Part shown: one piece after another, positions 18,201 through 31,111 of the stretch | Layout of the letters: each line of letters opens with the position of its first letter | Numbering within the stretch: the stretch's first letter is position 1 | Source: Mantamonas sphyraenae STR306 | Lineage: Eukaryota > Protista > CRuMs | Direction of reading: 5' to 3' | DNA length: 64,000 nt | Assembly: GCA_026936335.1 (NCBI GenBank) | Contig: JAPMXV010000001.1 | Span: 124,001-188,000 of the forward strand | Made by a program: the position numbers and the translations under genes | The notes under the pieces: model-generated | The model's database searches: none | What the model was told of the DNA's origin: nothing | What the model saw: the letters and a program-made list of their open reading frames with translations, nothing else

Positions 18201-19813
18201 TAGGCGTCCTGCTTGGCATCCTTGAACTGGCGGCCGCCGTGGATGCAGAGTTGGCCCTTGAAGGTGAACATGACGTGCTGTCCTCTGACAGCAGGTAGTT
18301 GCGAGTCTGGGTGCGGTTGTATCTGGGTCCAGGAGTCGGCAGCAAAGTCGTAGCGCCAGAGATCGTTCAGGAACTTGCGGACCTCGCTGATTTCCTGGGT
18401 CTGCGGGTCGACGCTCTTGTTACGATGGTAACCGCCAAACAGGTACATGGAGTTGCCAAACTGGACGGCAGCATGGTCCATGCGCTGCACTGGGTCAGCC
18501 GAGCTTTCCTTGTTGTACGGCGGCGACCATTGTTTTGTTTCTGTGCGGAAGCGCGTGGAGGTGTGAGTCGAACATGGAGAGAGGGAGAGAGGGAGGACTA
18601 GGTGGAGATCTGGGAGTTGGGAGAAAGGCGGGGACGGGAGGAGAGCGGAGGGGACCTGCAGGCACGTGGAGTCTCCGTGTGCAAACGGGACGCGCAAAGG
18701 TAGGTTGTGGGTGATGGACGTACCAATTGTGAAGCGTCGAAGTGTGTCGTCGGTCTTGTTTTCGATAGTCTCGCCGCCAAAGGAGTAGACAGAGCCGCCA
18801 TAGACGACGATGGAGTGACGTGCCTTTGGCATGATCATGGGATCGTAGCGAGGCGGATTGATGTAGGAACCGTTGTTCGCTGGTATGGACGGCATTGAGA
18901 GAGGGATGTGTGTAGCATGTGTGGTGGTTTTGCGAGTGTGAGAAGGGAGAGTGAGGGGTCAAAGAGGGAGAAAACTGCCGGTTGGCAGGCAGGCAGGCGT
19001 TTCTCACCAGTTACACGCCATTCGTCGACGTTGCCGACCTCCTTCTTGTAGGAGTCCTCTCCACCGAGGATGAGCATGGCTGTGCCGTACACGCCGAGAC
19101 CTTGGCCCGAGCGTGGGACGGGTGTACATGTGGAGTTGGTGCCATTCTGTGGTGTGGGGCCCAGAGGAGAGAGCACGTGTGCGTGTGAGCGCGAAGGAAC
19201 AGACGACAGCGAGTGGCGCAGGGGAGGTGGGGGGAGGAAGCGAGACCACAGCGAGGGTGGGATCGCATGGGACGGCCTCGTAGGTGCACACAGGGACGCT
19301 GGAGGAGGGAAATATGGAGCACAGATGCGTGTGTGGGGTCACGCAGGCGGGGCGTGGAGGGAGTCCGGAAAAAAACGGGGCAAATCACGGACAGGTGCGA
19401 AGCGGAAAGGGCCGGTGGAGCGGGCATGGAGGAGTTGCATACAGCAAACAGATGATGAAACGGGAGGAGGGGATATGGTGGGAGGTATGGACACATGGAG
19501 AATGGACACAACTTACGCAGACTCCACAGATGTCAACGACAAGGCCCGAGTAGGGAACGCCGTCGCAGCCGCCACATGTGGAATTGTCGCCTGCACAGAC
19601 ACCACAGCCGTCGTACACCTTGCCGGAGCCCTGTACTCCATCGCAACCAGGGCATGTTGTGTTGTCGCCGTCGCAGACGCCGCAGATGTCGTATGTCTTG
19701 ATTGGGCCTGTGGAAAGGCCGTCGCAGCCGGCGGCTTGCGCGGGCTGGGCGAGCAGCAGGCTCGCTGTGACGTACACGAGACACAAGTATGGAAGCAGAA
19801 GCAAAATGCGCAT
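9245..19813 (-). CDS. Giant polycystin-1/PKDREJ-like membrane protein (~3295 aa): signal peptide, Cys-rich repeats, kelch, IPT/TIG, REJ-GAIN/GPS, EGF, REJ-GAIN/GPS, ~5 TM, RG-rich tail
   Basis: Exons 19517-19813, 19008-19146, 18724-18879, 9245-18540. Signal peptide MRILLLLPYL..AQA; kelch FGG/LW repeats; LDGSSSVDPD and LDGGLSLDPD REJ motifs; GPS motifs CTCTHLTTF and CECTHLTTF. Confidence 0.88.
14577..14760 (-). repeat. Pro/Thr-rich mucin-like linker (PTPTPT)
   Basis: Low-complexity (PT)n in the ORF, between the first REJ and the first GAIN region. Confidence 0.85.
16960..17585 (-). repeat. Eight tandem 26-aa (78-nt) Cys-rich repeats GCDG..SG..D.CG.C.GDNSTC (three more in exons 1-2)
   Basis: Directly visible in the translation. 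Confidence 0.9.
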
Positions 19814-19910
19814 ACTTGCCACGTGATGTGTGTGTAATATGGAGTTGGTTGTAGCTTTTGGATGCGCAGACCGAGGCATACGAAAAACGACACAACCAAG
19901 CCGCACGAAC

Positions 19911-22900
19911 ATGGCTTCGACACACACCAAGCTCTTTGTGGTGCTTGTGGCTTTGATGACCAGCCTGGCGGTGCCTGCAGCACACGCCCAAGGCATGCAG
20001 AGCCTGTGTATCAACTGTCAAAGCGAACACGGCCAGTTGTACGTCGATTGGAACGAAACTTCCGGATCCAACACAGGTAGGTGAAAGTTGCAGGGTAGAC
20101 GTTGCACACGCATACAGGCGGCACCATAGCGCAGGTGGACCAAGACGTGGACATGTGCGCGCGGAAGAGGATTTTGCGGCGATAGGGAGCTGCAGGTGTT
20201 GCGAAACGCTGCTGCACGACAGCCGCCGTTTTTTTTCTCACGCATTAGGTTTCCGGACCAGGCAGGCGAGTGGCATCTGCGGACGAATGAAACTGACACA
20301 CGCAAACTGCACACAGACACATCCTTCCGCATTGCGGTGCAAGATGGCACACAACAGATGGCCACGGCGCTGATGGCCAAAACCAGTGGGGTGACGCTTT
20401 ATGGTGGGTTTTTGGTGGTGCGGGAGACACATTGGCGCGGGAGCAATGTGGTCGAGAGAAAGTGGCCAAAAGCTGGGAGACAGTGGCGATGCAAGACATC
20501 GCGAGGTGGTGCAGCCTGCGTGCGCAATGTGCATGGACATGTACACAGTATCATGCGTGCACATGGATGCGTGTGGCGTGTGTGGGGCCCGTGCAAGGAG
20601 ATGCAGGAAAGAAGAGGGCCTGGCAGGCGTTTTTGCAGTGCGAAACTGACCCGGAAAACGAACACATACACACAGGCACGACCAATCTGGAAACACTGGA
20701 GTGCACAAGCGTGCAACTCACGAATCTGACCATCCAAGGAAACACACTGCAAGCAACCGATCCCAACGGGGACATTGTTCTGGTACCGAAAGGAAGCGGC
20801 GCCGTGAAACTGGCCGGGAACAAACGACTGGACCTCACAGGAGTCACGCTGGTGATGGACGACGATGCAATCAGCGGCGACAAGATTGAGGGAGGTACCA
20901 TCAACGCAATCACAATCAACACACTCACATCGACGACGATCAACGTGGGACAGCTGCGCCTGACGGGCGACACGCTGAGCAACACAGCAGCCAACGGGGA
21001 CATTGTACTCAGCCCCAATGGCTCTGGTGTGGTGCGCCTCGCATCTGGAAAGACTCTGGACCTTACTGGCAGCACCCTGGTTGTCCCAGACAACTTTATC
21101 AGTGGCGACAAGGTGGAAGGAGGCACCATCAACGCAATCGCCATCAACACGCTGACTTCGGGTCAGGTGACCGTGGACAACCTGCGCCTGGACGGAAACA
21201 CTCTCTCCTCGCTCACAGGCAGCCTGACACTGCGCACAAACGACGGCAGCGCCGTCATTGTGCCTGCGGGCGAGACTCTGGACGTGAGCGCGGCCACCCT
21301 TACGCTGGCCGACAACCAGATTAGCGGAGACAAGATCAACGGAGGCACAGTCGACGAACTGCGCATCACACGCCTCAACAGCTCCGAAACAGACATCGGC
21401 ACTCTGCATCTGCAGGGTGACACCATCAGCACCGTAGGCGACAACCAAGACATCGTCCTGTCGCCCAAGTCGACCACAGCTCGTGTACGTGTGCAAGCAT
21501 CGCACACCATGGCCTTCTCCGGCGCCACTCTGGACCTTACTGGCGGCACACTCGTGTTGGACAACGACGAGATCAGCGGTGACAAGGTGGAGGGAGGCAC
21601 CATCAACGCCATCACCATCAACACGCTGACATCTGGCCAAGTCAACGCTGACAACCTGCGCTTGGACGGCAACACAGTGAGCTCGACCAATGCCAACGGA
21701 CACATCGTGCTCACGCCCAACGGAGCGGGCAACGTCGTGGTCACAGTCGGTAAATCCCTGGACCTCACGGGCGCCACACTCATCCTGGACAACGACGAGA
21801 TCAGCGGCGACAAGGTGGAGGGAGGCACCATCAACGCCATCACCATCAACACGCTGACTTCTGGCCAAGTCAACGCTGACAACGTGCGCCTGGACAACAA
21901 CGAGGTGAGCACCATCAGCGGCAACCAAGACTTGCGACTGAACGCAGACGGCACGGGCCAGGTGCGCGTGGTCAGCGGCAAGGTGCTCAACGCCTCGTCG
22001 ACAACAGTGGACATGCGCTACAGCGTGGTGCTTCTGGACGACGACGAAATCAGCGGAGACAAGGTGGAAGGAGGCACCATCAACGCCATCACCATCAACA
22101 CGCTGACCTCGGGCCAAGTCAACGCAGACAACCTGCGCCTGGATGGAAACACGCTCATGTCAACCGACACCAACGGCAACATCGTGCTCACACCCAACGG
22201 AGGCGGCCAGGTGGTTGTTACGCCTGGCAAGACGCTGGTGTTGACAGGTGCCACGTGGTGTTGGACGACGACGAGATCAGCGGTGACAAGGTGGAAGGAG
22301 GCACCATCAACGCAATCACCATCAACACGCTGACTTCCGGTCAGGTCAACGCAGACAACCTGCGCTTGGACGGCAACTCAGTGACCTCGACAGATGCCAA
22401 CGGACACATCGTGCTCACGCCCAACGGCGCTGGCAACGTCGTGGTCACAGCTGGCAAGTCGCTGGACCTCACGGGAGCCACGCTCATCCTGGACAACGAC
22501 GAGATCAGCGGTGACAAGGTGGAAGGGCGGCACGATCAACGCCATCACCATCAACACGCTGACCTCGGGCCAGGTCAACGCAGACAACCTGCGCATGGAC
22601 GGCAACACTCTCTCGTCGACCGACGCCAACGGACACATCGTGCTCACGCCCAACGGCGCAGGCAACGTCGTGGTCACAGCTGGCAAGTCTCTGGACCTCA
22701 CGGGAGCCACGCTCATCCTCGACAACGATGAGATCAGCGGCGACAAGGTGGAAGGAGGCACGATCAACGCCATCACCATCAACACCCTGACCTCGGGCCA
22801 GGTCAACGCAGACAACCTGCGCATGGACGGCAACACTCTCTCGTCGACCGACGCCAACGGAAACATCATCCTGACGCCCAACGGCTCTGGCAACGTGACG

Positions 22901-25900
22901 ATCACACCCGGAAAGACGCTCGACTTGACCAACGCCACACTCATCCTCGACGACGACGAGATCAGCGGTGACAAGGTGGAAGGCGGTACGATCAACGCCA
23001 TCACCATCAACACGCTGACGTCTGGCCAAGTGAACGCAGACAACCTGCGTCTGGACAACAACCGCATCTCGGTGACCAACGTGGACGGCAACTTGTACTT
23101 GACTGCCAACGGCCAGGGTGAGATCATTTTCGAGCACGGAAACACGCTCAACATGACCAACACAACCCTGATTCTGGACGACGACGAAATCAGTGGCGAC
23201 AAGGTGGAGGGAGGCACCATCAACGCCATCACCATCAACACGCTGACGTCTGGCCAGGTCAACGCAGACAACCTGCGCATGGACGGCAACACTCTCTCGT
23301 CGACCAACGCCAACGGACACATCGTGCTCACACCCAACGCGGGCAGGCAACGTCGTTCTCACGGCCGGCCACTCGCTGGACCTTACGGGAGCCACGCTCA
23401 TCCTGGACAACGACGAGATCAGCGGTGACAAGGTGGAAGGCGGCACGATCAACGCCATCACCATCAACACCCTGACCTCGGGCCAGGTCAACGCAGACAA
23501 CCTGCGCATGGACGGCAACACTCTCTCGTCGACCGACGCCAACGGACACATCATCCTGACGCCCAACGGCGCGGGCAAGGTGATCATCACACCCGGCAAG
23601 ACGCTCGACTTGACCAACGCCACACTCATCCTCGACGACGACGAGATCAGCGGTGACAAGGTGGAGGGAGGCACCATTGACGAGATCACCATCAACGTGC
23701 TCACGTCCCAACAGATCGATGCAGACAACCTGCGCTTCGACGGAAACACCATTTCGTCGACCAACGCAGGAGGCGACATCATCTTTGCTCCCGCACACGC
23801 CCTGAAACTGGCCGAGAACCGCACCTTTGACATGACCAACACCACGCTGCTCCTCGACGACGACGAGATCAGCGGAGACAAGGTGGAAGGCGGCACGATC
23901 AACAACATCACCATCCGACATATGTTCTCCGAATACGTCCAAGTGGACAACCTGCAACTGGACGGCAACTCTATCTCCGCCTTGGACCCCAACGGGTCGA
24001 TCTACATTATGCCTTCGGGCAGTGGACGCCTCGTGCTGCAACCTGGCCATGACTTTGACCTGCGCAACACCACGCTGCTGCTCGACGACGACGAGATCAG
24101 CGGAGACAAGGTGGAAGGTGGCACGATCACGAACATCACCATCACCACTCTGTACTCTGGCCAAGTCAACGTGGACAACTTGCGTCTGGATGGCAACACA
24201 CTGAGCGCTCTCAACGCCAACGGGGACGTCGTTCTTCAACCAGACGGCACAGGCCGTGTTTACGTGACCACTCGCTTCCAGGTGGACAATCTGCACATGG
24301 ACGCCAACGTGATCTCCTCTGTGGGCAGCAACCAGATTGTCCTTGCACCCAACGGCACGGGCAAGGTTGTGATCAACCCGGGCTCCACGTTGGACCTCAC
24401 CAGCACCACGCTGCTGCTCGACGACGACGAAATCCACGGCGACAAGGTGGAGGGCGGCACCATCAACGCCATCACCATCAACACGCTGTACTCGGGCCAG
24501 GTCAACACAGACAACCTGCGCCTCGACGGCAACACGCTGAGTACGACGTCGGGCAACCTCATTTTCAACCCCAGTGGTAGCCAGGTGGTCTTTCAGCCGG
24601 GCAAGAACATCGACCTGCGCGGCACGACGCTGCTGTTGGACAACGACGAGATCAGCGGTGACAAGATCGAAGGTGGCACCATCAGCTCGATCACCATCAA
24701 CACGCTGAGTAACACCAATCTCCAGTCGATCACCATCAACGCTCTCACCGTCTCTGCGCTTACTGGCTCCATCACAACAGCCACTGCGGGCATTCTCACT
24801 GTGGACGAGCTGCAGCTCAACGGTCAGACCATCAGCACCGTGTCGCAGAACGCCGATTTGATCCTGGATCCTCAGGGCGGTGGCAAGGTTGTCGTGACCG
24901 CAGGCAAGTCGCTGGACCTTACTGGCGCCACCCTGGTGTTGGACAACGACGAAATCAGCGGTGACAAGGTGGAGGGAGGCACGATCAACGCCATCACCAT
25001 CAACACGCTGACTTCCGGTCAGGTCAACGCAGACAACCTGCGCATGGACGGCAACACCCTCTCGTCGACCAACGCCAACGGACACATCGTGCTCACACCC
25101 AACGGGGCAGGCAACGTCGTTCTCACGGCCGGCCACTCGCTGGACCTCACGGGAGCCACGCTCATCCTGGATGATGACGAGATCAGCGGTGACAAGGTGG
25201 AGGGCGGCACCATCAACGCCATCACCATCAACACGCTGACCAACACCGAGTCGACCATCGGGAACCTGTACATGGCTGAGAACAACTTGACGACAACCCA
25301 GGTCAACGGTACAATCAACATTGTGCCGAACGGAGCAGGCTGGCTGGTTGTGCAGCCAGGCACCACGGTGGACTTGCGCATGACGACACTGTTGCTGGAC
25401 GACGACGAGATCAGCGGTGACAAGGTGGAAGGCGGCACGATCGACGCCATCAACATCACGCAGCTGACCAACACCGAGAGCGTGATTGGCAACCTGCGCA
25501 TGGAAGGCAACAACATTAGCGCCGTAAACGCTGGCGGCGACATTGTGCTTGTTCCCGCAGAGGGTGGTGCCGTTGTGGTCACGCCTGGGCGTACCCTGGA
25601 TCTGCGTGGTGTGACGGTCCTCCTGTCCAACGACAGTATTTCGGCCGATTCCGTGGAGGGCGGCGTGGTTGAGAGCATGCAGGTCAACTCGCTCACCAGC
25701 ACGCTGCTCAACATCGACGGCATGATCTTGGCCAACAACAGCATCACTGTGGACACGCCCAACGCAGATCTCGTGCTGAGCGCAGATGGCACAGGCAAGA
25801 TTGTGTTTGCTGCCAGCAAGACGGTGGATCTGCGTGGCAACACCCTGCTGCTGGACGACGACGAGATCAGCGGCGACAAGGTGGAAGGCGGCACGATCAG

Positions 25901-27092
25901 CAACATCACCATCAACACACTGACCTCGGACCGCATCACCGTCGGTGACTTGCATCTTGAGACCAACACACTGACCACAACGACGGGCGGCCTGCTGCTT
26001 ACGAGTGCAAGCAACCACATCGCCGTGACTCCTGGTACTGTGTTGGACCTGACCAACACAGCCAGCATCCTGCTGAACGACAACTCGATCAGCGGTGACA
26101 AGGATCGAAGGCGGACGCATCGCAAACACTACCATCGATGCACTCTACTCAACAACGATGCGTGTGGGCAACACAAGACTGCAGGATGGCGAGCTTGTGG
26201 TGACACAGGGCAGCGGAGACCTGCGCCTGGATGCGGCAGGAAGCGGCAAGGTGCACGTGAGCACGTCCGACCTGCGTGTGGGCGTGGTGCATGTGGACCA
26301 CACCAACGGCGACGTGAGCACTGTGTCGGGCAACCAGAACCTGACCCTGAGTGCACATGGATCGGGCAAGGTGCGCGTGGCGCCTGGCGAAACGCTGGAT
26401 CTGCGCGGCGTGCAGGTGATGCTGGACGACGACGCAATCAGCGGCGACAAGGTGGAGGGAGGTTCGATGGAATCGTTGAACGTGACGCAGTACCTTGCAG
26501 TTGAGGGCGAACTGGAGATGGACAACCTGATTGTGTACAACAACACGCTGCGCAGCAAGAACAACGCAAGCATTGTGCTGTCGCCTTCGCCGGCGGCAGG
26601 CTTTGTGGGCATTGGCACAGAGACACCGCAGTACCTGCTGCAGGTTGGTACGAGCGGAGACGGCTCTGTGGCTGTGGGCAACGCGTGGAACCTGTTTTCG
26701 GATGCACGCCTCAAGAAGGACGTGCAACCGCTGCATCAGCCTCTGACATGGTTAACCGACTTCGTGGCGTGAGCTTCAAGTGGAAGCGTCCCGGGGCCGA
26801 CGAAGCGCGTGTGTATGGCTTCATTGCGCAGGAGATGGAGGCGGTGGTGCCCGAGCTTGTGCACACGGGGGCCGATGGAATCAAGAGCGTGGACTACGGC
26901 AAGATGACGGCCGTGCTGACAGGTGCCGTGACAGAGCACGAGAAGAGTGTGATGAGCACCACAAGCAACGTTCAGGAGCGCCTGGATGAGCTTCACAGCT
27001 CCATGGCGCACATGGACAGCTCGATGCACGATGCTGCCAAGCGCATGGATGCCATCGAGGCACGCATGGCTGCTCTGATGGGCAAGCTTTGA
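19911..27092 (+). CDS. Secreted phage tail-fibre-like repeat protein with C-terminal peptidase S74 intramolecular chaperone domain (~2239 aa after correcting five 1-nt indels)
   Basis: Exons 19911-20076, 20266-20403, 20676-27092. Signal peptide MASTHTKLFVVLVALMTSLAVPAAHA; ~24 repeats; C-terminus GFVGIGTETP..WNLFSDARLKKDV..LRGVSFKW..GFIAQEMEAVVPELV..SVDYGKM followed by a coiled coil. Confidence 0.85.
20720..26590 (+). repeat. ~24 tandem repeats, typically 76 aa/228 nt: LDDDEISGDKVEGGTINAITINTLTSGQVNADNLRLDGNTLSSTDANGHIVLTPNGAGNVVVTAGKSLDLTGATLI
   Basis: ISGDK(V/I)EGG motif recurs at ~228-nt spacing (e.g. 22730, 22958, 23186). Confidence 0.95.
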
Positions 27093-27231
27093 CAGGCATC
27101 TGTGTGCACGTAACGCACGCACACGCACACGCAACACACAGGGGAATGATCGCGGGGGAATCAGCAAAAATGAATTCCAAAACTCAACACACACTCACTC
27201 ACTCACACACACTCCCTCGCTCTTGATGAGC

Positions 27232-30200
27232 TCATGTGCGCAGAGCTGCCGACACGTTGTCTGCCTGGCGGCGCGGCAACTGATTGAGGGCATCGTCGAT
27301 CCATGCATCGTTGAGAACGTCGTTGTCGACATGGCGAACAAGTCGTGCAATGACAGAGTCTGCCCAAAGAGCTTTGCGCTGGGTGTCTGTGACACGCTGG
27401 TCGGCCACCTCGTCCCAAATGGGGTCTGTGGTCACGGCAGAAAGGATGACGGCCACGCCAAGCTGGTGCTTGCGCTCTGCGTTTGCGAGCCGTGGTACAA
27501 ACTCGATGGCCTGAATGGCAGCGGTGAGACGGTCGTCGTTGGAGCACTCATCGTTGTTCATGGTGTCGATGGTAAGTTGGATGAGTTCGTCCAATGGGAT
27601 GCTCGGGGTGGCATTGGTGACAGGGACCTGGCGCTCAAGCGTGAATACTTCCTGCAGCCCCTGCTCAAACTCTTCAAGCAGCAGACGTTGCTGAGCAAGG
27701 GCCCCCTGCTGTTCGATGTCGTCCTCCATCTCGCCACTATCCATGACGTCGTTGTCGTGTGTGGCAAGCACGGTGATGGCAGCCAGCTTGCCCAAGGAGA
27801 GGAAGGTCTTGCGCTGCAGGGCAAACTCTGCCTGTCTGCTCTCGCCCAGCAGGTCTTGCGCCGCCTGTTCAAAGTCGCCCACGTGGACGGCGTGGAGCCA
27901 GGCCATGGGAGTGTCGCGCTTGCGCAGAAAGTCGAAAAGGGCGTCGTCAAACTCGCGTCCGAGGGACAACAGTTTGGCCTGGCCGCGGCGCGAGTCGTGA
28001 TAGTGTTCAAAGACGGCGTCGACCAATTCGTCGTTCTCGCGCATCATGCTGGCCAGACGGACGTCGCCGTCGGCTGCACTCTCGCACAGTTGGATGAGTG
28101 TGGCGTAGTCTGCAAACTGTTCGGCCACGAAAAAGGCGCGTTCCAACTGGGTGGCGCCGCCCTTTTGCAACACGGTGAGCACGTGGTGGCGCACGTCGTC
28201 AAACTCATCCTCCCTGTGCACGCCGTTGAACAGCCAATGTTTGGCCAGCACAAAGTACGGTTCGTACACCGTCTCCAAGTTTTCGTGCAGCACACCATCC
28301 TGTGCCGTGCGCACTGTCCCACGCTGTTGATGTTGCTGTAGCTGTTGCTTGCTCTTTTTGCCCTGTGTCTCGTGGAGGCCACCGTGAGTGTCTGCAAGGG
28401 CCACGGCGAGGGATCCCAGATGACGCAGTTGCTCCTGCAGCGGATCCAGCAGCAGTGACTCCTGAGTCCAACGCAGCAGAGAGAGGGGCGCTTGCTGGAC
28501 ACTGTGCACATCCAGGCCCTCGTGATCCATGGCCACGAGGCTGTCGTCGATGTATTCGGTGGCGCCTGTCATGAGGGCGTCGATGACGGCGCCTGTGAGG
28601 AGGGCGAGCTGGGTGGCTCGTGTGTCGTCGTTGTGGTACGCCCAATCCTTGTCTGTTTGTGCACGGAGGAGGTGGGGCAGGCACTGGGGCACAGAGGAGA
28701 CCTGGCTGAAGAACACCTCTTGCACGCCGTGTTTGGTGGCCAGCGAGGCACCGCCGCTGCGTGCGGCCACACATCGTTCCATGGCCTGAAAGATGAACCG
28801 GCTGCTGGCTTCGTCGCCGGCAATGTCGTTGCAGTAGCGACGCAGGGCAATGGTGGCGTGCAGCGCAGCGCCCTGTTGCACCAACGCCCAAACGTCTTCC
28901 AATGGACACTTGAGCCCTCCAAGGACGCCTGTGTCTCGCAGGAACTGCACAAACATTGCGTCTCGCATGCGCTTTTCGTGAAGCTGCTCGTCCAGCAGCA
29001 AACTGGACGACACCGACGTGTCCAGGCCCGAGCGCTGTTCGCCTTCGCTCCACCGTGCGTCAAACTTGGGGATGGCGTTCAACATGCGTGCGTGGAACGT
29101 CACCAGTGTGCCCTCGCCCATACCACGTTCCACATCCTCCTGGAACCGGCCCACGTCCAGTCGCCCCTGTTGGTGCAGCGCAAAGGCCAGCTTGATAAAC
29201 GCATCCGAATCCACTTCTGCCTCGTCGTACTGCGCCTCCAACGAGTCACCCGCTGCCACTGAGGATGCGTCACCTACTCGTTTGCCTCCTCGTGCTCCTC
29301 CTCGTCGTCCACGTCGACCAGAGGCATCCATTTGCATGGCGTCGTCCTCGCCATCGTCGTTTTCATCGTCGTCCTCATCATCCTCGTCGCCGCCATACTC
29401 TCCTCGGCGCTCGTCTGCCCCAGGTGCAGAGTGGACGCCGTGGATGAGGCCTGTGTCAGAGGAAGCCCCGTCGACGAGGGCGTGGACAGAATCGAGCGAC
29501 ACAAAGTGGCCGCGGTGTGAGTGGTCGTACTGCACCACGGCGATTCCGTTGAGAAGGAGGACCATGGCGGCACCAGAGAGACCCGGACAGGGGCCCAGAC
29601 CCAACACATCGTCGAGTTCGAGCATGGCGCTGTTGCCCACGGTGAGGATTGAACCCTGCTGGCTTGCACTGCCGCTCCCGCTGCTGCTGAGGGGCAAAAG
29701 GTACAGGACAGAGTCGACGCGCAGAAAGGCTGTGTCTGCATGCACCATCAGGGTGCTGTGGTGGTGGTGGTCACGGTCGTCTGCGTCCAGCTGCGACGTC
29801 ACTCGTCCCAACACACGCACCTCCTTGGCTGTCACTGACAGCACTTCGTACGACAGGATGCTGTCGTCATCCGAGTAAGCACGCAGCACAAAGGCCTGCT
29901 GCTGCTTCTGCTTCTGGGAACGTGGGTGTGTGCTGTTGCTGCGCGTTGCGTTCAATTGCACATCCAACAACGCCAGCTTTCCGTCCAGTGGCTGCATCCA
30001 TCCCAGCGTGTCTTCTGGTATCCGATGTACCACAAACACAACGCATCCTGTTGCAACACAAACAGTTCCGTCGTGTCCTTCTCCTCGTCGTACTGGCCCA
30101 CTGCCATGGTCACAAACGAACTCCCCACCCCTCCACGTCCATCCTCTCCCCGGGAAGAGGATACCTTGCCAGACGAGGAGAACGAAGAGGAGGAGGAGAC

Positions 30201-31111
30201 GAAGAGGAAGAGGAGGAGGAAGCAGAAGCAGAGGAAAACAGATAGGACCAGATGCTTGCGCCTGCAGACGGCTGTTCGTCCTCCGACTGCTGTTGCGCTT
30301 GCACAGCCACCTCACGGTACACCATTTCGTCGTCCTCGTTGAGAGTGACAAAGAAGAGCCCCCCGAGGCACAGCCGAGGGCAAAGCCGTTGGGGTACAAG
30401 GTTTGCAGGCGGACAATCTCGTCGTTGTCGTCGAGCGGCAAACGCACCGAGTGCCAGGCTGTATCGTCGTGCCAGGTTGGCCAATACTTGAGTGTACCCG
30501 ATGGCGAACATGCGACCACGCCCAGCAGGCCCGACTCGTTCATGTTTGCCGGGACGAGGTCGACAAACCAGGAATCGAGCTGCTCCAAAGTCTCGCCAGC
30601 CTGTCCTCGCTGTCCAGGCAGGGTGAGTTGTGCCACCGTTTTCCCTCGGTGACTCCTGTCGCGTGGGTTGTGTTGTGCATGTGCTGCAGCCTGCCACAGC
30701 CAGACGCTCGTTTCCGTGAGCAGGAGGCACATGCCGTTCAAGTCCGCCCGCGCAGCATGGTAGGCAAACTGGTGCTGCTTGTTCACAGCCACATTCACCG
30801 CTGCTGGCAGCATGCTGTACATCTGTGCCACCATCGAGTCGCTGTGCTCACATGAACAACACCGTCCACACACATTGCGGTGTCGCCAGCAGACGTGTCA
30901 AAACGCGTCAGCCAAAGGGCGCGCCCACAAGCGGGCGGTGATCAGGAACCGCTTCTTCTTGGCAGGCAGCAAAACGGGTGATGGAGGAGACGGAGAGGGA
31001 CAGGCACAAAACCTACGTTGAACTCAGAACAGTTGCATCCCTGCGAGCCTTGACGGCAGAACGATGGGCGACGCTGCCGGGACTGGCAGTGCGGGTGGTG
31101 GTGCATTGCAT
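27232..31111 (-). CDS. NUP133: Nucleoporin Nup133
   Basis: LPAAV, GVVACSPSGTLKYWP, FFSQVS, AEQFADYATLIQLCE, AWLH, RKTFLSLGKLA. Intron 30842-31016; start at 31111 is tentative; three apparent 1-nt deletions at ~30362, ~30128, ~30010. Confidence 0.82.

What the first reader, a model, noticed from the sequence alone, without database searches (positions are those of the whole stretch)
19911..27092. Domesticated phage tail-fibre-like gene: signal peptide, two spliceosomal introns, ~24 beta-rich repeats and an intact S74 auto-cleaving chaperone
Seen: a eukaryotic signal peptide and two GT-AG introns (20077-20265, 20404-20675) precede ~2000 aa of repeats (DNLRLDGNTLSSTDANGNIILTPNG.G / LDDDEISGDKVEGGTI), then VGIGT.TP and FSDARLKKDV..GFIAQE..SVDY and a coiled coil. 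Established: the S-D-x-R-x-K Ser/Lys dyad defines the intramolecular chaperone domain that trimerises phage tailspikes/fibres and cleaves itself off; in eukaryotes it is best known from MYRF/MrfA. From memory (not searched), the repeat resembles marine phage fibre/structural proteins. No other viral genes flank it. Inference: a virus-derived gene repurposed as a long secreted trimeric filament, e.g. surface or flagellar hair, extrusome shaft, or prey-capture adhesin.
Basis: partly seen in the sequence, partly recalled or inferred. Interest (0 to 1): 0.86.

Follow-up and report, generated by a model that had tools for sequence, protein, structure and literature searches.

The report
Phage-type fibre gene in a flagellate
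A free-living flagellate carries, among ordinary nuclear genes, an intron-containing gene for a very long secreted fibre built from phage tail-fibre repeats and a self-cleaving phage-type folding domain; the breaks in its reading frame are mostly sequencing errors, so it is probably a working host gene of viral or bacterial ancestry.

Summary
The described features exist at 19911-27092: a signal peptide, two in-phase GT-AG introns, about 26 units of 76 aa, a VGIGT motif, a Peptidase_S74 domain with an S-D-x-R-x-K dyad, and a coiled coil.

Short-read contigs of the same organism correct three firmly (22254, 26102, 26746). One is probably corrected (22523) and one is unresolved (23340). Differences from a paralogue are mostly synonymous (dN/dS 0.03-0.21), so the gene is probably intact.

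The repeat unit is homologous to fibre proteins on phage contigs, including P-SSM2 and Melnitz, and on 162 IMG/VR contigs. The S74 domain is closest to bacterial and phage tail-fibre proteins. No hit carried a eukaryotic name.

The immediate neighbours are cellular genes, and codon usage matches theirs. A roughly 10,000-aa paralogue 55 kb upstream shares the signal peptide and both intron positions. This scan had already noted that paralogue (s1-596405) and these frameshifts (s1-604441).

Three copies of four repeats are predicted to form an intertwined trimer (score 0.79, best control 0.00).

No RNA data were reachable, so transcription, splicing, cleavage and function remain inferred. Assembly statistics match those of Mantamonas sphyraenae.

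The parts
19911..19988 (+). Start codon and 26-aa signal-peptide-like leader (charged start, hydrophobic core, A-H-A before Q)
   Evidence: Translation. It is the only stretch with a 19-residue Kyte-Doolittle mean above 2 in the whole product. The paralogue has an equivalent leader.
19911..20076 (+). Exon 1 (166 nt, ends in phase 1): leader plus a C-x-x-C ... Y-V-D-W segment
   Evidence: Donor ACAG|GTAGGT. The segment is conserved in exon 1 of the paralogue, which is 169 nt and also ends in phase 1.
20077..20265 (+). An alternative acceptor at 20316 (intron 20077-20316) is equally in frame.
   Evidence: GT..AG boundaries. The alternative gives an 87-nt exon 2 identical in length to the paralogue's exon 2, and has the CACAG| acceptor seen at the other three acceptors of the two genes. 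No RNA data.
20266..20403 (+). Exon 2 (138 nt, or 87 nt from 20317), ends in phase 1
   Evidence: Its 3' part aligns with the paralogue's exon 2. Donor TATG|GTGGGT.
20404..20675 (+). Intron 2 (272 nt, GT..AG, phase 1)
   Evidence: The paralogue has a 171-nt phase-1 intron at the equivalent position, with unrelated sequence.
20676..27092 (+). Exon 3: shaft, S74 domain, coiled coil and stop. It is interrupted in the assembly by five one-base frameshifts.
   Evidence: The pieces sum to about 2,232 aa.
20684..26595 (+). Array of about 26 units of about 76 aa. Each unit has an L-D-D-D-E-I-S-G-D-K-V-E-G-G-T-I half and a D-N-L-R-L-D-G-N-T-L-S-S-T..N-G..I-V-L-T-P-N-G half.
   Evidence: TRF period 228 nt. 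24 ISGDK motifs. 28 profile matches, all of the genome's matches lying in this gene and its paralogue. Homologous to phage fibre proteins.
22254..22254 (+). Frameshift 1: one C missing relative to the paralogue and to the short-read contigs
   Evidence: Contigs of X1 and X3 put in a C behind 22253 at full depth. The X3 contig covering 22087-22291 has no other difference and carries the target-specific letters.
22523..22523 (+). Frameshift 2: one extra base in a G run
   Evidence: One X1 contig of target type lacks the base. The other contigs end here or belong to the paralogue, so the correction is probable, not firm.
23340..23340 (+). Frameshift 3: one extra base. Unresolved.
   Evidence: Only a low-depth X4 contig with three other differences covers it, and it leaves one base out. 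X1-X3 have no contig here.
26102..26102 (+). Frameshift 4: one extra G
   Evidence: All contigs of X1-X3 leave it out, including ones anchored in target-specific sequence.
26746..26746 (+). Frameshift 5, inside the S74 domain: one C missing
   Evidence: Long unique contigs (3.2 kb in X1, 11.3 kb in X2) and X3 all put in a C behind 26746. Their depth equals that of the flanking unique contigs, so both alleles carry it.
26605..26619 (+). V-G-I-G-T motif preceding the S74 domain, as in bacterial and phage tail-fibre-domain proteins
   Evidence: Compare G-I-G-T-T..P..L-E-V in P0166, P0167 and P0171.
26698..26864 (+). Peptidase_S74 / intramolecular chaperone domain. The Ser of S-D-A-R-L-K is at 26698-26700 and the Lys at 26713-26715.
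   Evidence: PF13884 at 42.1 bits on the part after the frameshift. 27 PHROG families matched, most of them tail-fibre or baseplate (best E 1e-16). PDB 6F45 long tail fibre by sequence. The AlphaFold model (pLDDT 88) best matches the MyRF ICA domain 7DC3.
26865..27089 (+). C-terminal long helix / coiled coil, with no transmembrane segment
   Evidence: A single helix spans residues 50-113 of the model. There is no hydrophobic stretch.
27169..27174 (+). AATGAA 77 nt after the stop, a candidate polyadenylation signal
   Evidence: The motif was proposed genome-wide by other first-stage notes and was not tested here.

Best explanation
This is a genuine nuclear gene of a heterotrophic flagellate. 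The assembly statistics match Mantamonas sphyraenae. Its ancestry lies in the tail-fibre proteins of phages, or of bacteria or eukaryotic viruses that carry the same modules.

The product is about 2,240 aa. It has a signal peptide, a short Cys-containing head encoded across two phase-1 introns, about 26 copies of a 76-aa fibre unit, and a C-terminal S74 intramolecular chaperone followed by a coiled coil.

Proposed mechanism. Everything from here on is inference, partly by analogy with endosialidase, phage fibre and MYRF ICA domains:
- The chain enters the ER.
- Three chains are brought into register by the C-terminal S74 and coiled-coil module.
- The shaft folds into an intertwined homotrimer.
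- The Ser/Lys dyad cuts the chaperone off at the Ser encoded at 26698.
- The mature, very long fibre is exported to the cell surface or surroundings. There it most likely serves adhesion, to the substrate during gliding or to bacterial prey.

Shown here: the sequence features, the homology to phage fibres, the cellular context, conservation of gene structure in a paralogue, purifying selection, and that most frameshifts are assembly errors. The trimer is a prediction only.
For: Eukaryotic context:
- Neighbours are a SAC9-like protein, a REJ/GPS/Kelch receptor and a CHD remodeller.
- Neighbours of the paralogue are an RCC1-BTB-Ank protein, a class II aaRS and a RhoGAP-MyTH4 protein.
- Third-codon-position G+C (GC3) is 0.76-0.82, against 0.72-0.79 in the neighbours.
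- Short-read contigs of 3.9, 3.2 and 11.3 kb run from the gene out into its flanks.

Gene structure:
- The signal peptide, both phase-1 intron positions and exon content are shared with the paralogue at C1:58485-89740, while the intron sequences differ.

Intactness:
- Frameshifts at 22254, 26102 and 26746 are absent from all covering short-read contigs, at full depth. The one at 22523 is probably absent too.
- The published assembly is PacBio/FALCON polished with Pilon. Its 25.06 Mb, 78 contigs and GC 59.19% match G000.
- dN/dS against the paralogue is 0.03-0.21.

Phage ancestry of the shaft:
- P-SSM2 gp118 and the Melnitz tail fibre, both next to neck genes.
- phrog_15769, E 1.6e-28.
- 698 hits among 1.84 billion representative proteins. 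The context-checked hits P0002, P0004 and P0185 lie on phage-type contigs; P0001, the best in that search, lies beside very large genes including a DUF4815 protein. P0185 came, not.
- 162 IMG/VR contigs.
- Both halves of the unit occur in the same order in P0016, P0008 and P0013.

S74 domain:
- Pfam, PHROG and PDB sequence matches, the dyad and the ICA-type fold.

Trimer:
- Three copies of 304 aa scored ipSAE 0.79 as the median of runs scoring 0.00, 0.79 and 0.79. The best of 3 controls scored 0.00.
- pLDDT was 91-92 in the good runs, against 74.5 for the monomer.
- In the tool's calibration the mark was reached by 21 of 30 solved one-chain pairs and by 0 of 23 single chains.
Against: - No RNA run was on record, so transcription and both splice junctions are unverified.
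- The frameshift at 23340 is unresolved, and the one at 22523 rests on one contig in a repeat.
- The short-read runs come from one study, probably from the same culture as the assembly.
- One of the three trimer runs failed. The tool warns that passes can come from memory of solved fibres and that its calibration used two copies, not three.
- The trimer state of the S74 module itself was not tested.
- No homologue named as eukaryotic was found, so conservation across species cannot be shown.
- The target's S74 is only 35% identical to the paralogue's, so the two genes have a mosaic history that I cannot date.
- There is no anchor domain or globular tip to indicate what the fibre binds.
Confidence: 0.72

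Rival explanations
1. The gene is a decaying duplicate (pseudogene) of the giant paralogue. A partial copy of the giant fibre gene has accumulated five frameshifts and makes no functional product.
For: There are five one-base frameshifts in 6.4 kb of the assembly, while neighbouring 9.6-kb and 7.4-kb ORFs are unbroken. The frameshift at 23340 could not be checked. Part of the gene is a 99%-identical copy of the paralogue.
Against: Three frameshifts, including the one in the unique S74 region, are absent from all short-read contigs at full diploid-level depth, and a fourth is probably absent. Differences from the paralogue are mainly synonymous, with dN/dS 0.03-0.21. The paralogue itself also shows one such shift, and another first-stage note reports 1-nt deletions in a neighbouring ORF, which suggests residual assembly indels. 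The S74 domain is 35% identical to the paralogue's, so this is not a recent simple copy.
Confidence: 0.08
2. The gene belongs to an integrated eukaryotic virus (polinton-like virus, virophage or giant-virus fragment) and serves as that virus's capsid fibre, not as a host protein.
For: Polinton-like viruses integrated in protist genomes very commonly encode large modular fibre proteins (up to 3.9k aa) ending in Peptidase_S74 (PMC12220804). A Heterosigma virus has S74 fibre-like genes (PMC13659346). A contig binned as a giant-virus MAG encodes an ORF of at least 2,842 aa that is 34% identical over about 700 aa.
Against: A cellular gene starts about 1 kb upstream, and another ORF ends 140 nt downstream. 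No capsid, packaging ATPase, protease, integrase or polymerase gene lies near this gene or near the paralogue. The signal peptide and two spliceosomal introns at positions shared by two paralogues are host-type features. Codon usage matches the host's. A virus of this kind remains a possible donor.
Confidence: 0.05
3. The locus is bacterial or phage DNA from the xenic culture, joined to a eukaryotic contig by mis-assembly.
For: The culture was xenic and over 60% of the long-read data were discarded as contaminant (PMC10492846). The nearest relatives are prokaryotic or phage proteins.
Against: Independent short-read contigs cross both borders into eukaryotic genes. GC and GC3 equal those of the neighbours. 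The reading frame needs two GT-AG introns to reach its start codon and signal peptide. A second copy lies in another cellular neighbourhood on the same 441-kb contig. The best relative is only 35-42% identical.
Confidence: 0.02
4. It is an old, vertically inherited eukaryotic fibre family that merely looks phage-like because relatives of this under-sampled lineage are missing from the databases.
For: The genome belongs to a poorly sampled deep lineage and its own proteins were not in the searched libraries. Two hits come from a marine eukaryote catalogue. One of them (P0199, 802 aa) has related repeats, an S74 domain with S-R-R-A-L-K, and a coiled coil. Host-like codon usage and the very divergent S74 domains of the two paralogues point to a long residence.
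Against: No hit carried a eukaryotic name or eukaryotic context. Every hit whose context showed a recognisable marker was phage-type (P22 or SU10 capsid, Phage_stabilise, DUF3310); others were uninformative, and one sat on a contig binned as a giant virus. The family has only two members in this genome. Long residence is compatible with an ancient transfer and does not contradict viral or bacterial ancestry.
Confidence: 0.1

Closest known systems
Tail-fibre and fibre-like structural proteins of marine T4-like and podo-type phages (P-SSM2 gp118, Methylophilales phage Melnitz tail fibre, phrog_15769, metagenomic P0185/P0004/P0002)
   Same: They share the same sequence modules (I-S-G-D-K-V-E-G-G-T-I and D-N-L-R-L-D-G-N-T-L-S-S-T-N..N-G..I..L-T-P-N-G-T-G). 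In some they sit in the same order within a unit. Identity is 35% over 93% of a 919-aa piece and up to about 70% within motifs. Both are predicted or known to be trimeric, and an S74 domain is often present in the same or a neighbouring protein.
   Different: The phage genes lie in virion modules, without introns or signal peptides. Their units have other periods (45-110 aa) and they usually carry a distal binding domain. This gene has a regular 76-aa unit repeated about 26 times and sits among cellular genes.
Bacterial 'tail fiber domain-containing' giant proteins with C-terminal Peptidase_S74 (for example from Patescibacteria)
   Same: They have the V/G-I-G-T..P..L..V motif, then S-D-x-R-L-K, then L-R-G-V-x-F-x-W-K ... 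G-F-I-A-Q-E ... P-E-L-V, then a coiled coil. The target's S74 is 43% identical to P0163, more than to its own paralogue.
   Different: The proteins are prokaryotic, with other N-terminal repeats and no introns.
MYRF / MrfA (eukaryotic membrane-tethered transcription factors with an ICA domain)
   Same: Both are eukaryotic nuclear genes using the phage-type self-cleaving trimerising ICA domain. The best structural match of the modelled domain is the MyRF ICA crystal structure 7DC3.
   Different: This gene has no Ndt80-type DNA-binding domain and no transmembrane segment after the ICA. It has a signal peptide and a fibre shaft instead. By sequence the domain matches phage fibres (6F45), not MYRF.
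S74-terminated fibre proteins of polinton-like viruses and giant viruses of protists
   Same: Both are large modular repeat proteins ending in Peptidase_S74, found in protist genomes (PMC12220804; PMC13659346; GVMAG contig L054).
   Different: Those sit inside viral elements next to capsid and packaging genes. This gene and its paralogue have cellular neighbours, introns and a secretory leader.
The giant paralogue in the same genome (C1:58485-89740, about 10,000 aa)
   Same: It has the same leader, the same two intron positions, the same repeat and the same A-W-N-L-F-S-D-x-R-L-K junction. A 1.15-kb block is 99% identical in DNA.
   Different: The paralogue inserts thousands of residues of SBBP beta-propeller repeats between the shaft and S74. 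Its S74 is only 35% identical. The target goes from shaft directly to S74.

Membership tests
Peptidase_S74 / intramolecular chaperone auto-processing (ICA) domain | Profile match above the curated threshold | tested here: met
   PF13884 at 42.1 bits against a cut-off of 22, profile positions 15-58, on the piece after the frameshift. 27 PHROG families matched, most of them tail-fibre or baseplate, best E 1e-16.
Peptidase_S74 / intramolecular chaperone auto-processing (ICA) domain | Catalytic Ser-Lys dyad in an S-D-x-R-x-K motif at the start of the domain | tested here: met
   S-D-A-R-L-K is present, with Ser at 26698-26700 and Lys at 26713-26715.
Peptidase_S74 / intramolecular chaperone auto-processing (ICA) domain | Motif and the rest of the domain lie in one reading frame | tested here: met
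   Not met in the assembly, which has a frameshift at 26746. Met in all short-read contigs of three runs, which carry one more C there at full depth.
Peptidase_S74 / intramolecular chaperone auto-processing (ICA) domain | ICA fold: small beta unit followed by a long C-terminal helix | tested here: met
   AlphaFold2 model of 114 aa, pLDDT 88.2. The top Foldseek hits are the MyRF ICA domain 7DC3 (probability 1.00, E 0.009, TM 0.53). 3GW6 and 3GUD appear lower in the list. The E-value is above 0.001, so the support is moderate.
Peptidase_S74 / intramolecular chaperone auto-processing (ICA) domain | Self-cleavage at the Ser after trimer assembly | not testable with these tools
   This needs expression of wild type and S/K mutants, or proteomics.
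Phage tail-fibre shaft proteins | Sequence homology of the repeat unit to proteins in phage virion modules | tested here: met
Phage tail-fibre shaft proteins | Homotrimeric intertwined shaft | tested here: inconclusive
   This is a prediction only. The score was 0.79 (runs 0.00, 0.79, 0.79) against a best control of 0.00, with pLDDT 91-92. The monomer model is extended, with pTM 0.39. No solved structure matched significantly.
Phage tail-fibre shaft proteins | Encoded within a phage or prophage structural module | tested here: not met
   The neighbours are cellular eukaryotic genes. The gene has introns and a signal peptide.
MYRF / MrfA family | Ndt80-type DNA-binding domain before the ICA and a transmembrane segment after it | tested here: not met
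   No such Pfam match was found in any piece. No hydrophobic stretch exists apart from the N-terminal leader.
Fibre gene of an integrated polinton-like or giant virus | Lies in an element with capsid, packaging ATPase, protease, and integrase or polymerase genes | tested here: not met
   The flanks of the target and of the paralogue hold cellular genes only.
Spliced, secreted eukaryotic gene | Introns removed and mRNA made | not testable with these tools
   No RNA run was on record. The support is comparative only: intron positions and phases are conserved in the paralogue.

The most novel reading that the evidence does not exclude
A bacterivorous gliding flagellate has taken the receptor-binding fibre of bacteriophages into its own secretory pathway and uses it to catch or hold bacterial prey or the substrate. 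It has one plain shaft version (this gene) and one version armed with beta-propellers (the giant paralogue). This would be a eukaryotic cell structure built on a phage fibre plan, including the self-cleaving chaperone.
Probability: 0.15. Interest if true: 0.85.

Novelty: new variant of a known kind. Interest (0 to 1): 0.62.

Why it matters
The phage-type self-cleaving chaperone is known in eukaryotes from MYRF transcription factors and from fibres of viruses integrated in protist genomes. Here the whole fibre plan (shaft repeats plus chaperone) appears as an ordinary host gene with introns and a secretory leader, in a deep-branching and little-studied lineage, and in two paralogues kept under purifying selection.

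If the protein is made and exported, it would be a clear case of a viral or bacterial adhesion device turned into a eukaryotic extracellular structure. It would also offer a tractable system (a regular 76-aa unit and a predicted trimer) for studying how such fibres fold in the ER.

The case also shows in practice that frameshifts in repeat-rich genes of long-read assemblies should be checked against reads before calling pseudogenes.

Tried and rejected
- Pfam on the repeat pieces gave only sub-threshold chance-like hits (Dehydratase_SU, BiPBP_C and others). I disregarded them.
- A PDB sequence search with the repeat found nothing.
- Foldseek with the four-repeat monomer model gave no significant match. 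The weak rows (BadA, T4 gp34, reovirus sigma1, Kp7 fibre) all have E above 2 and are not used as evidence.
- A protein search with the cullin-like ORF, meant to place the organism, returned nothing at E 1e-30 and cost one search. The organism was instead inferred from assembly statistics.
It was repeated with the unit alignment A2.
- The ESM Atlas look-up gave only weak leads: recognition below the usual mark, with some clusters labelled Uroviricota.
- The joints reported by read laying inside the array are jumps of short contigs between repeat copies. They are not evidence of deletions or splicing.
- I considered programmed frameshifting and rejected it. The shifts are absent from short-read DNA contigs, and they correspond to single-base differences from the paralogue.
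- I considered that the shifts might be one allele of a heterozygote. I rejected this for 26746 because the corrected contig has the same depth as the flanking unique contigs.
All searches used pieces by reference. The only joining was a local translation of the 5' exons to check phase.
- No S74 phylogeny was built. The sample available here (long bacterial proteins only, about 60 alignable residues) would not resolve it.

Full report
**What is in the sequence**

The window is eukaryotic. Its long ORFs encode a SAC9-like protein, a REJ/GPS/Kelch polycystin-like receptor and a CHD remodeller, and GC is about 0.59-0.61 throughout.

On the + strand an ATG at 19911 opens a 26-aa leader with a hydrophobic core, ending A-H-A before Q. 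This is the only strongly hydrophobic stretch of the whole product.

- Exon 1 ends at 20076 with the donor ACAG|GTAGGT.
Both introns are phase 1 with GT..AG ends.
- From 20684 to 26595 runs an array of units of about 76 aa. TRF finds a 228-nt period. There are 24 ISGDK-type motifs. A profile of the unit gives 28 matches, some partial.
- After the array come V-G-I-G-T (26605) and S-D-A-R-L-K (Ser at 26698, Lys at 26713).
- A PF13884 match follows at 42.1 bits against a cut-off of 22.
- A long helix then runs to the stop at 27090-27092.

The roughly 2,230 codons are not one frame in the assembly. Single-base shifts lie at 22254 (a C missing), 22523 (an extra base in a G run), about 23340 (an extra base), 26102 (an extra G) and 26746 (a C missing). 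The last falls between the catalytic motif and the rest of S74. Three of them are single-base differences from an otherwise closely similar paralogue. Another first-stage note (s1-604441) had listed the same five shifts.

**Are the shifts real?**

G000 has 25,061,354 bases in 78 contigs. The published FALCON PacBio assembly of Mantamonas sphyraenae has 25.06 Mb, 78 primary contigs and GC 59.19%. It was polished with Racon and Pilon and came from a xenic culture (PMC10492846). I take the genome to be this one; that is an inference from statistics.

Four DNA runs from one study hold the stretch. Their contigs were laid on 20900-26890 and checked against the target-versus-paralogue differences.

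| Site | What the short-read contigs show | Status |
|---|---|---|
| 22254 | X1 and X3 put in a C at full depth. The X3 contig over 22087-22291 has no other difference and carries five target-specific letters. | Firmly corrected |
| 22523 | One X1 contig of target type lacks the base. The other contigs end there or are the paralogue's. | Probably corrected |
| 23340 | Only a low-depth X4 contig with three other differences covers it. | Unresolved |
| 26102 | All of X1-X3 leave out the G, including contigs with the target's letter at 26070 or anchored in target-only sequence from 25865. | Firmly corrected |
| 26746 | All of X1-X3 put in a C, on unique contigs of 3.2 and 11.3 kb. Depth (40.3, 57) equals that of the flanking unique contigs, so both alleles carry it. 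| Firmly corrected |

With that C the reading continues ...P-L-T-M-V-N-R-L-R-G-V-S-F-K-W-K..., the canonical S74 continuation.

Aligned segments differ from the paralogue mostly at synonymous sites, with dN/dS of 0.03, 0.11, 0.18 and 0.21. I conclude that the gene is probably intact and that the shifts are residual long-read consensus errors in a repeat that short-read polishing could not fix.

**The paralogue**

PF13884 occurs only twice in the genome, and all 54 repeat-profile matches lie in these two loci.

The second gene, at C1:58485-89740 and 55 kb upstream, has open frames of 6,502 and 3,809 aa separated by one more single-base shift. It carries the same repeats, then SBBP beta-propeller repeats, then a full S74 and a coiled coil. 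The scan had noted it before (s1-596405).

It has its own signal peptide, the same C-x-x-C...Y-V-D-W segment, and two phase-1 GT-AG introns at the equivalent positions. Those introns have unrelated sequence and are 105 and 171 nt long. This is comparative support for the introns.

It also suggests that the target's intron 1 may end at 20316 rather than 20265. That choice is in frame, gives an 87-nt exon 2 equal in length to the paralogue's, and has the CACAG| acceptor seen at the other three acceptors.

The two genes are mosaic:
- 1.15 kb is 99% identical in DNA.
- Other blocks are 84-96% identical.
- The S74 domains are only 35% identical. The target's S74 is closer (43%) to a Patescibacteria protein.

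**Relatives elsewhere**

The repeat matches the following:
- P-SSM2 gp118 and the Melnitz 'tail fiber'. Both lie just upstream of the neck genes of T4-like marine phages.
- phrog_15769, at E 1.6e-28.
- 698 proteins among 1.84 billion representatives, the best at 221 bits and 42% identity.
- P0185, with 35% identity over 93% of a 919-aa piece.

Context-checked hits and their contigs:
- P0002 lies on a contig with a P22-type coat protein, a lysozyme, Cro and lambda P.
- P0004 has a K1-lyase C-terminal domain next to Phage_stabilise.
- P0185 lies near a DUF3310 gene in a compact co-directional array.
- L028 carries an SU10-type capsid protein, with a separate S74 protein nearby.

Both halves of the unit, including the exact I-S-G-D-K-V-E-G-G-T-I motif, recur in these proteins. 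In some they occur in the same order. IMG/VR holds 162 contigs with relatives. One of them, binned as a giant-virus MAG, has an ORF of at least 2,842 aa next to a class II aaRS.

Long S74-bearing relatives are bacterial 'tail fiber domain-containing' proteins at 31-45% identity. By sequence, the nearest solved structure is a phage long tail fibre, 6F45. The modelled domain (pLDDT 88) best fits the MyRF ICA structure 7DC3.

No hit bore a eukaryotic name. Two come from a marine eukaryote catalogue, and one of these (P0199) has related repeats, an S74 domain and a coiled coil.

**Is it a host gene or an integrated virus?**

The literature shows that polinton-like viruses in protist genomes commonly encode large fibres ending in S74 (PMC12220804). 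Algal giant viruses carry S74 genes too (PMC13659346). Such a virus could therefore be the donor.

Several observations point to a host gene:
- The target is bounded by a cellular gene 1 kb upstream and by another ORF 140 nt downstream.
- The paralogue is bounded by an RCC1-BTB-Ank protein, a class II aaRS and a RhoGAP-MyTH4 protein.
- GC3 (0.76-0.82) matches that of the neighbours.
- The genes carry leaders and introns.
- Short-read contigs cross both borders.

Together these argue against an integrated element, contamination or a chimera.

**Structure and mechanism**

As a monomer, four units fold into an extended chain with three short strands per unit (pLDDT 74.5, pTM 0.39).

Three copies were predicted to form an intertwined trimer:
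- The score was 0.79 as the median of runs scoring 0.00, 0.79 and 0.79.
- The best of three controls scored 0.00.
- pLDDT was 91-92, with about 1,690 confident contacts.
- In the tool's calibration the mark was reached by 21 of 30 solved one-chain pairs and by 0 of 23 single chains.
- The tool warns that the calibration used two copies and that memory of solved fibres can give a pass.

The product has three Cys, all in the N-terminal head. It has 31 N-x-S/T sites and no transmembrane segment. There is no globular tip before S74.

The most likely course is as follows. It is inferred by analogy with endosialidase, phage fibre and MYRF ICA domains.
1. The chain is imported into the ER.
2. Three chains are registered by the S74 and coiled-coil module.
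3. The shaft folds.
4. The chaperone cuts itself off at the Ser.
5. A long adhesive fibre is exported.

What the fibre binds is unknown. Adhesion to the substrate or to bacterial prey fits the organism's gliding, bacterivorous habit but is speculation.

**Limits**

- No RNA run was available, so expression and splicing are untested.
- The shift at 23340 is unresolved.
- All reads come from one study.
Every search used pieces by reference, and the only joining was a local translation of the 5' exons.

**Verdict**

This is a new variant of a known kind: the phage-type S74 fibre plan present as an intron-bearing, secretory host gene family of two members in a deep-branching flagellate.

Noticed in passing
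G000:C1:58485-89740 (loci L012, L013, L006, L003, L004): A giant paralogue of about 10,000 aa. It has a leader, two introns, fibre repeats, then thousands of residues of SBBP beta-propeller repeats, then S74 and a coiled coil. One single-base frame change lies near C1:78330, probably another assembly error.
   Followed up: partly
window 21099-22250 versus C1:59428-60580: A 1.15-kb block is 99% identical between the two fibre genes, while the rest is 80-96% and the S74 domains are 35% identical. This suggests recent gene conversion within an old gene pair. Short-read contigs here have double depth.
   Followed up: partly
window 21274, 26096 and 26727: At these three positions all short-read contigs read another base than the assembly (A, C and G respectively). 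These are further probable consensus errors or collapsed copies. The change at 26727 is synonymous.
   Followed up: no
L054:3723-12248 (IMG/VR contig GVMAG-S-ERX555907-90_000001): A contig binned as a giant-virus MAG (GC 0.34) encodes an ORF of at least 2,842 aa next to a class II aminoacyl-tRNA synthetase. The ORF has six 105-aa units of the same fibre repeat and a Melnitz-like tail-fibre segment. It could be a giant-virus fibre or a mis-binned jumbo phage.
   Followed up: partly
P0199 and P0186 (marine eukaryote catalogue entries): P0199 (802 aa) combines D-N-L-R-L-D-G-N-T-L-S-type repeats with an S74 domain (S-R-R-A-L-K) and a long coiled coil. P0186 (981 aa) has the repeats and a G-I-G-T motif but no S74. 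These are possible planktonic eukaryote or virus relatives, and no contig context is on record.
   Followed up: no
window 27169-27174: AATGAA lies 77 nt after the stop codon, in the 140-nt gap between two convergent genes. It fits the candidate polyadenylation signal proposed in other notes on this genome.
   Followed up: no
window 27232-30873 (- strand): This 1,213-aa ORF, called Nup133 in another first-stage note, gave no Pfam match at E 0.01 in two scans. That note reports compensating 1-nt deletions in it, which would fit residual assembly indels.
   Followed up: no
window 18895-19911: The fibre gene and the REJ/GPS/Kelch polycystin-like receptor gene are head to head, with about 1 kb between their start codons. 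Possible co-regulation of a surface receptor and a surface fibre was not examined.
   Followed up: no
PMC10492846, Table 1: The longest contig of the published transcriptome of the presumed source organism is 32.28 kb, close to the roughly 31-kb coding length of the giant paralogue. It may be that gene's mRNA, but this could not be checked here.
   Followed up: no
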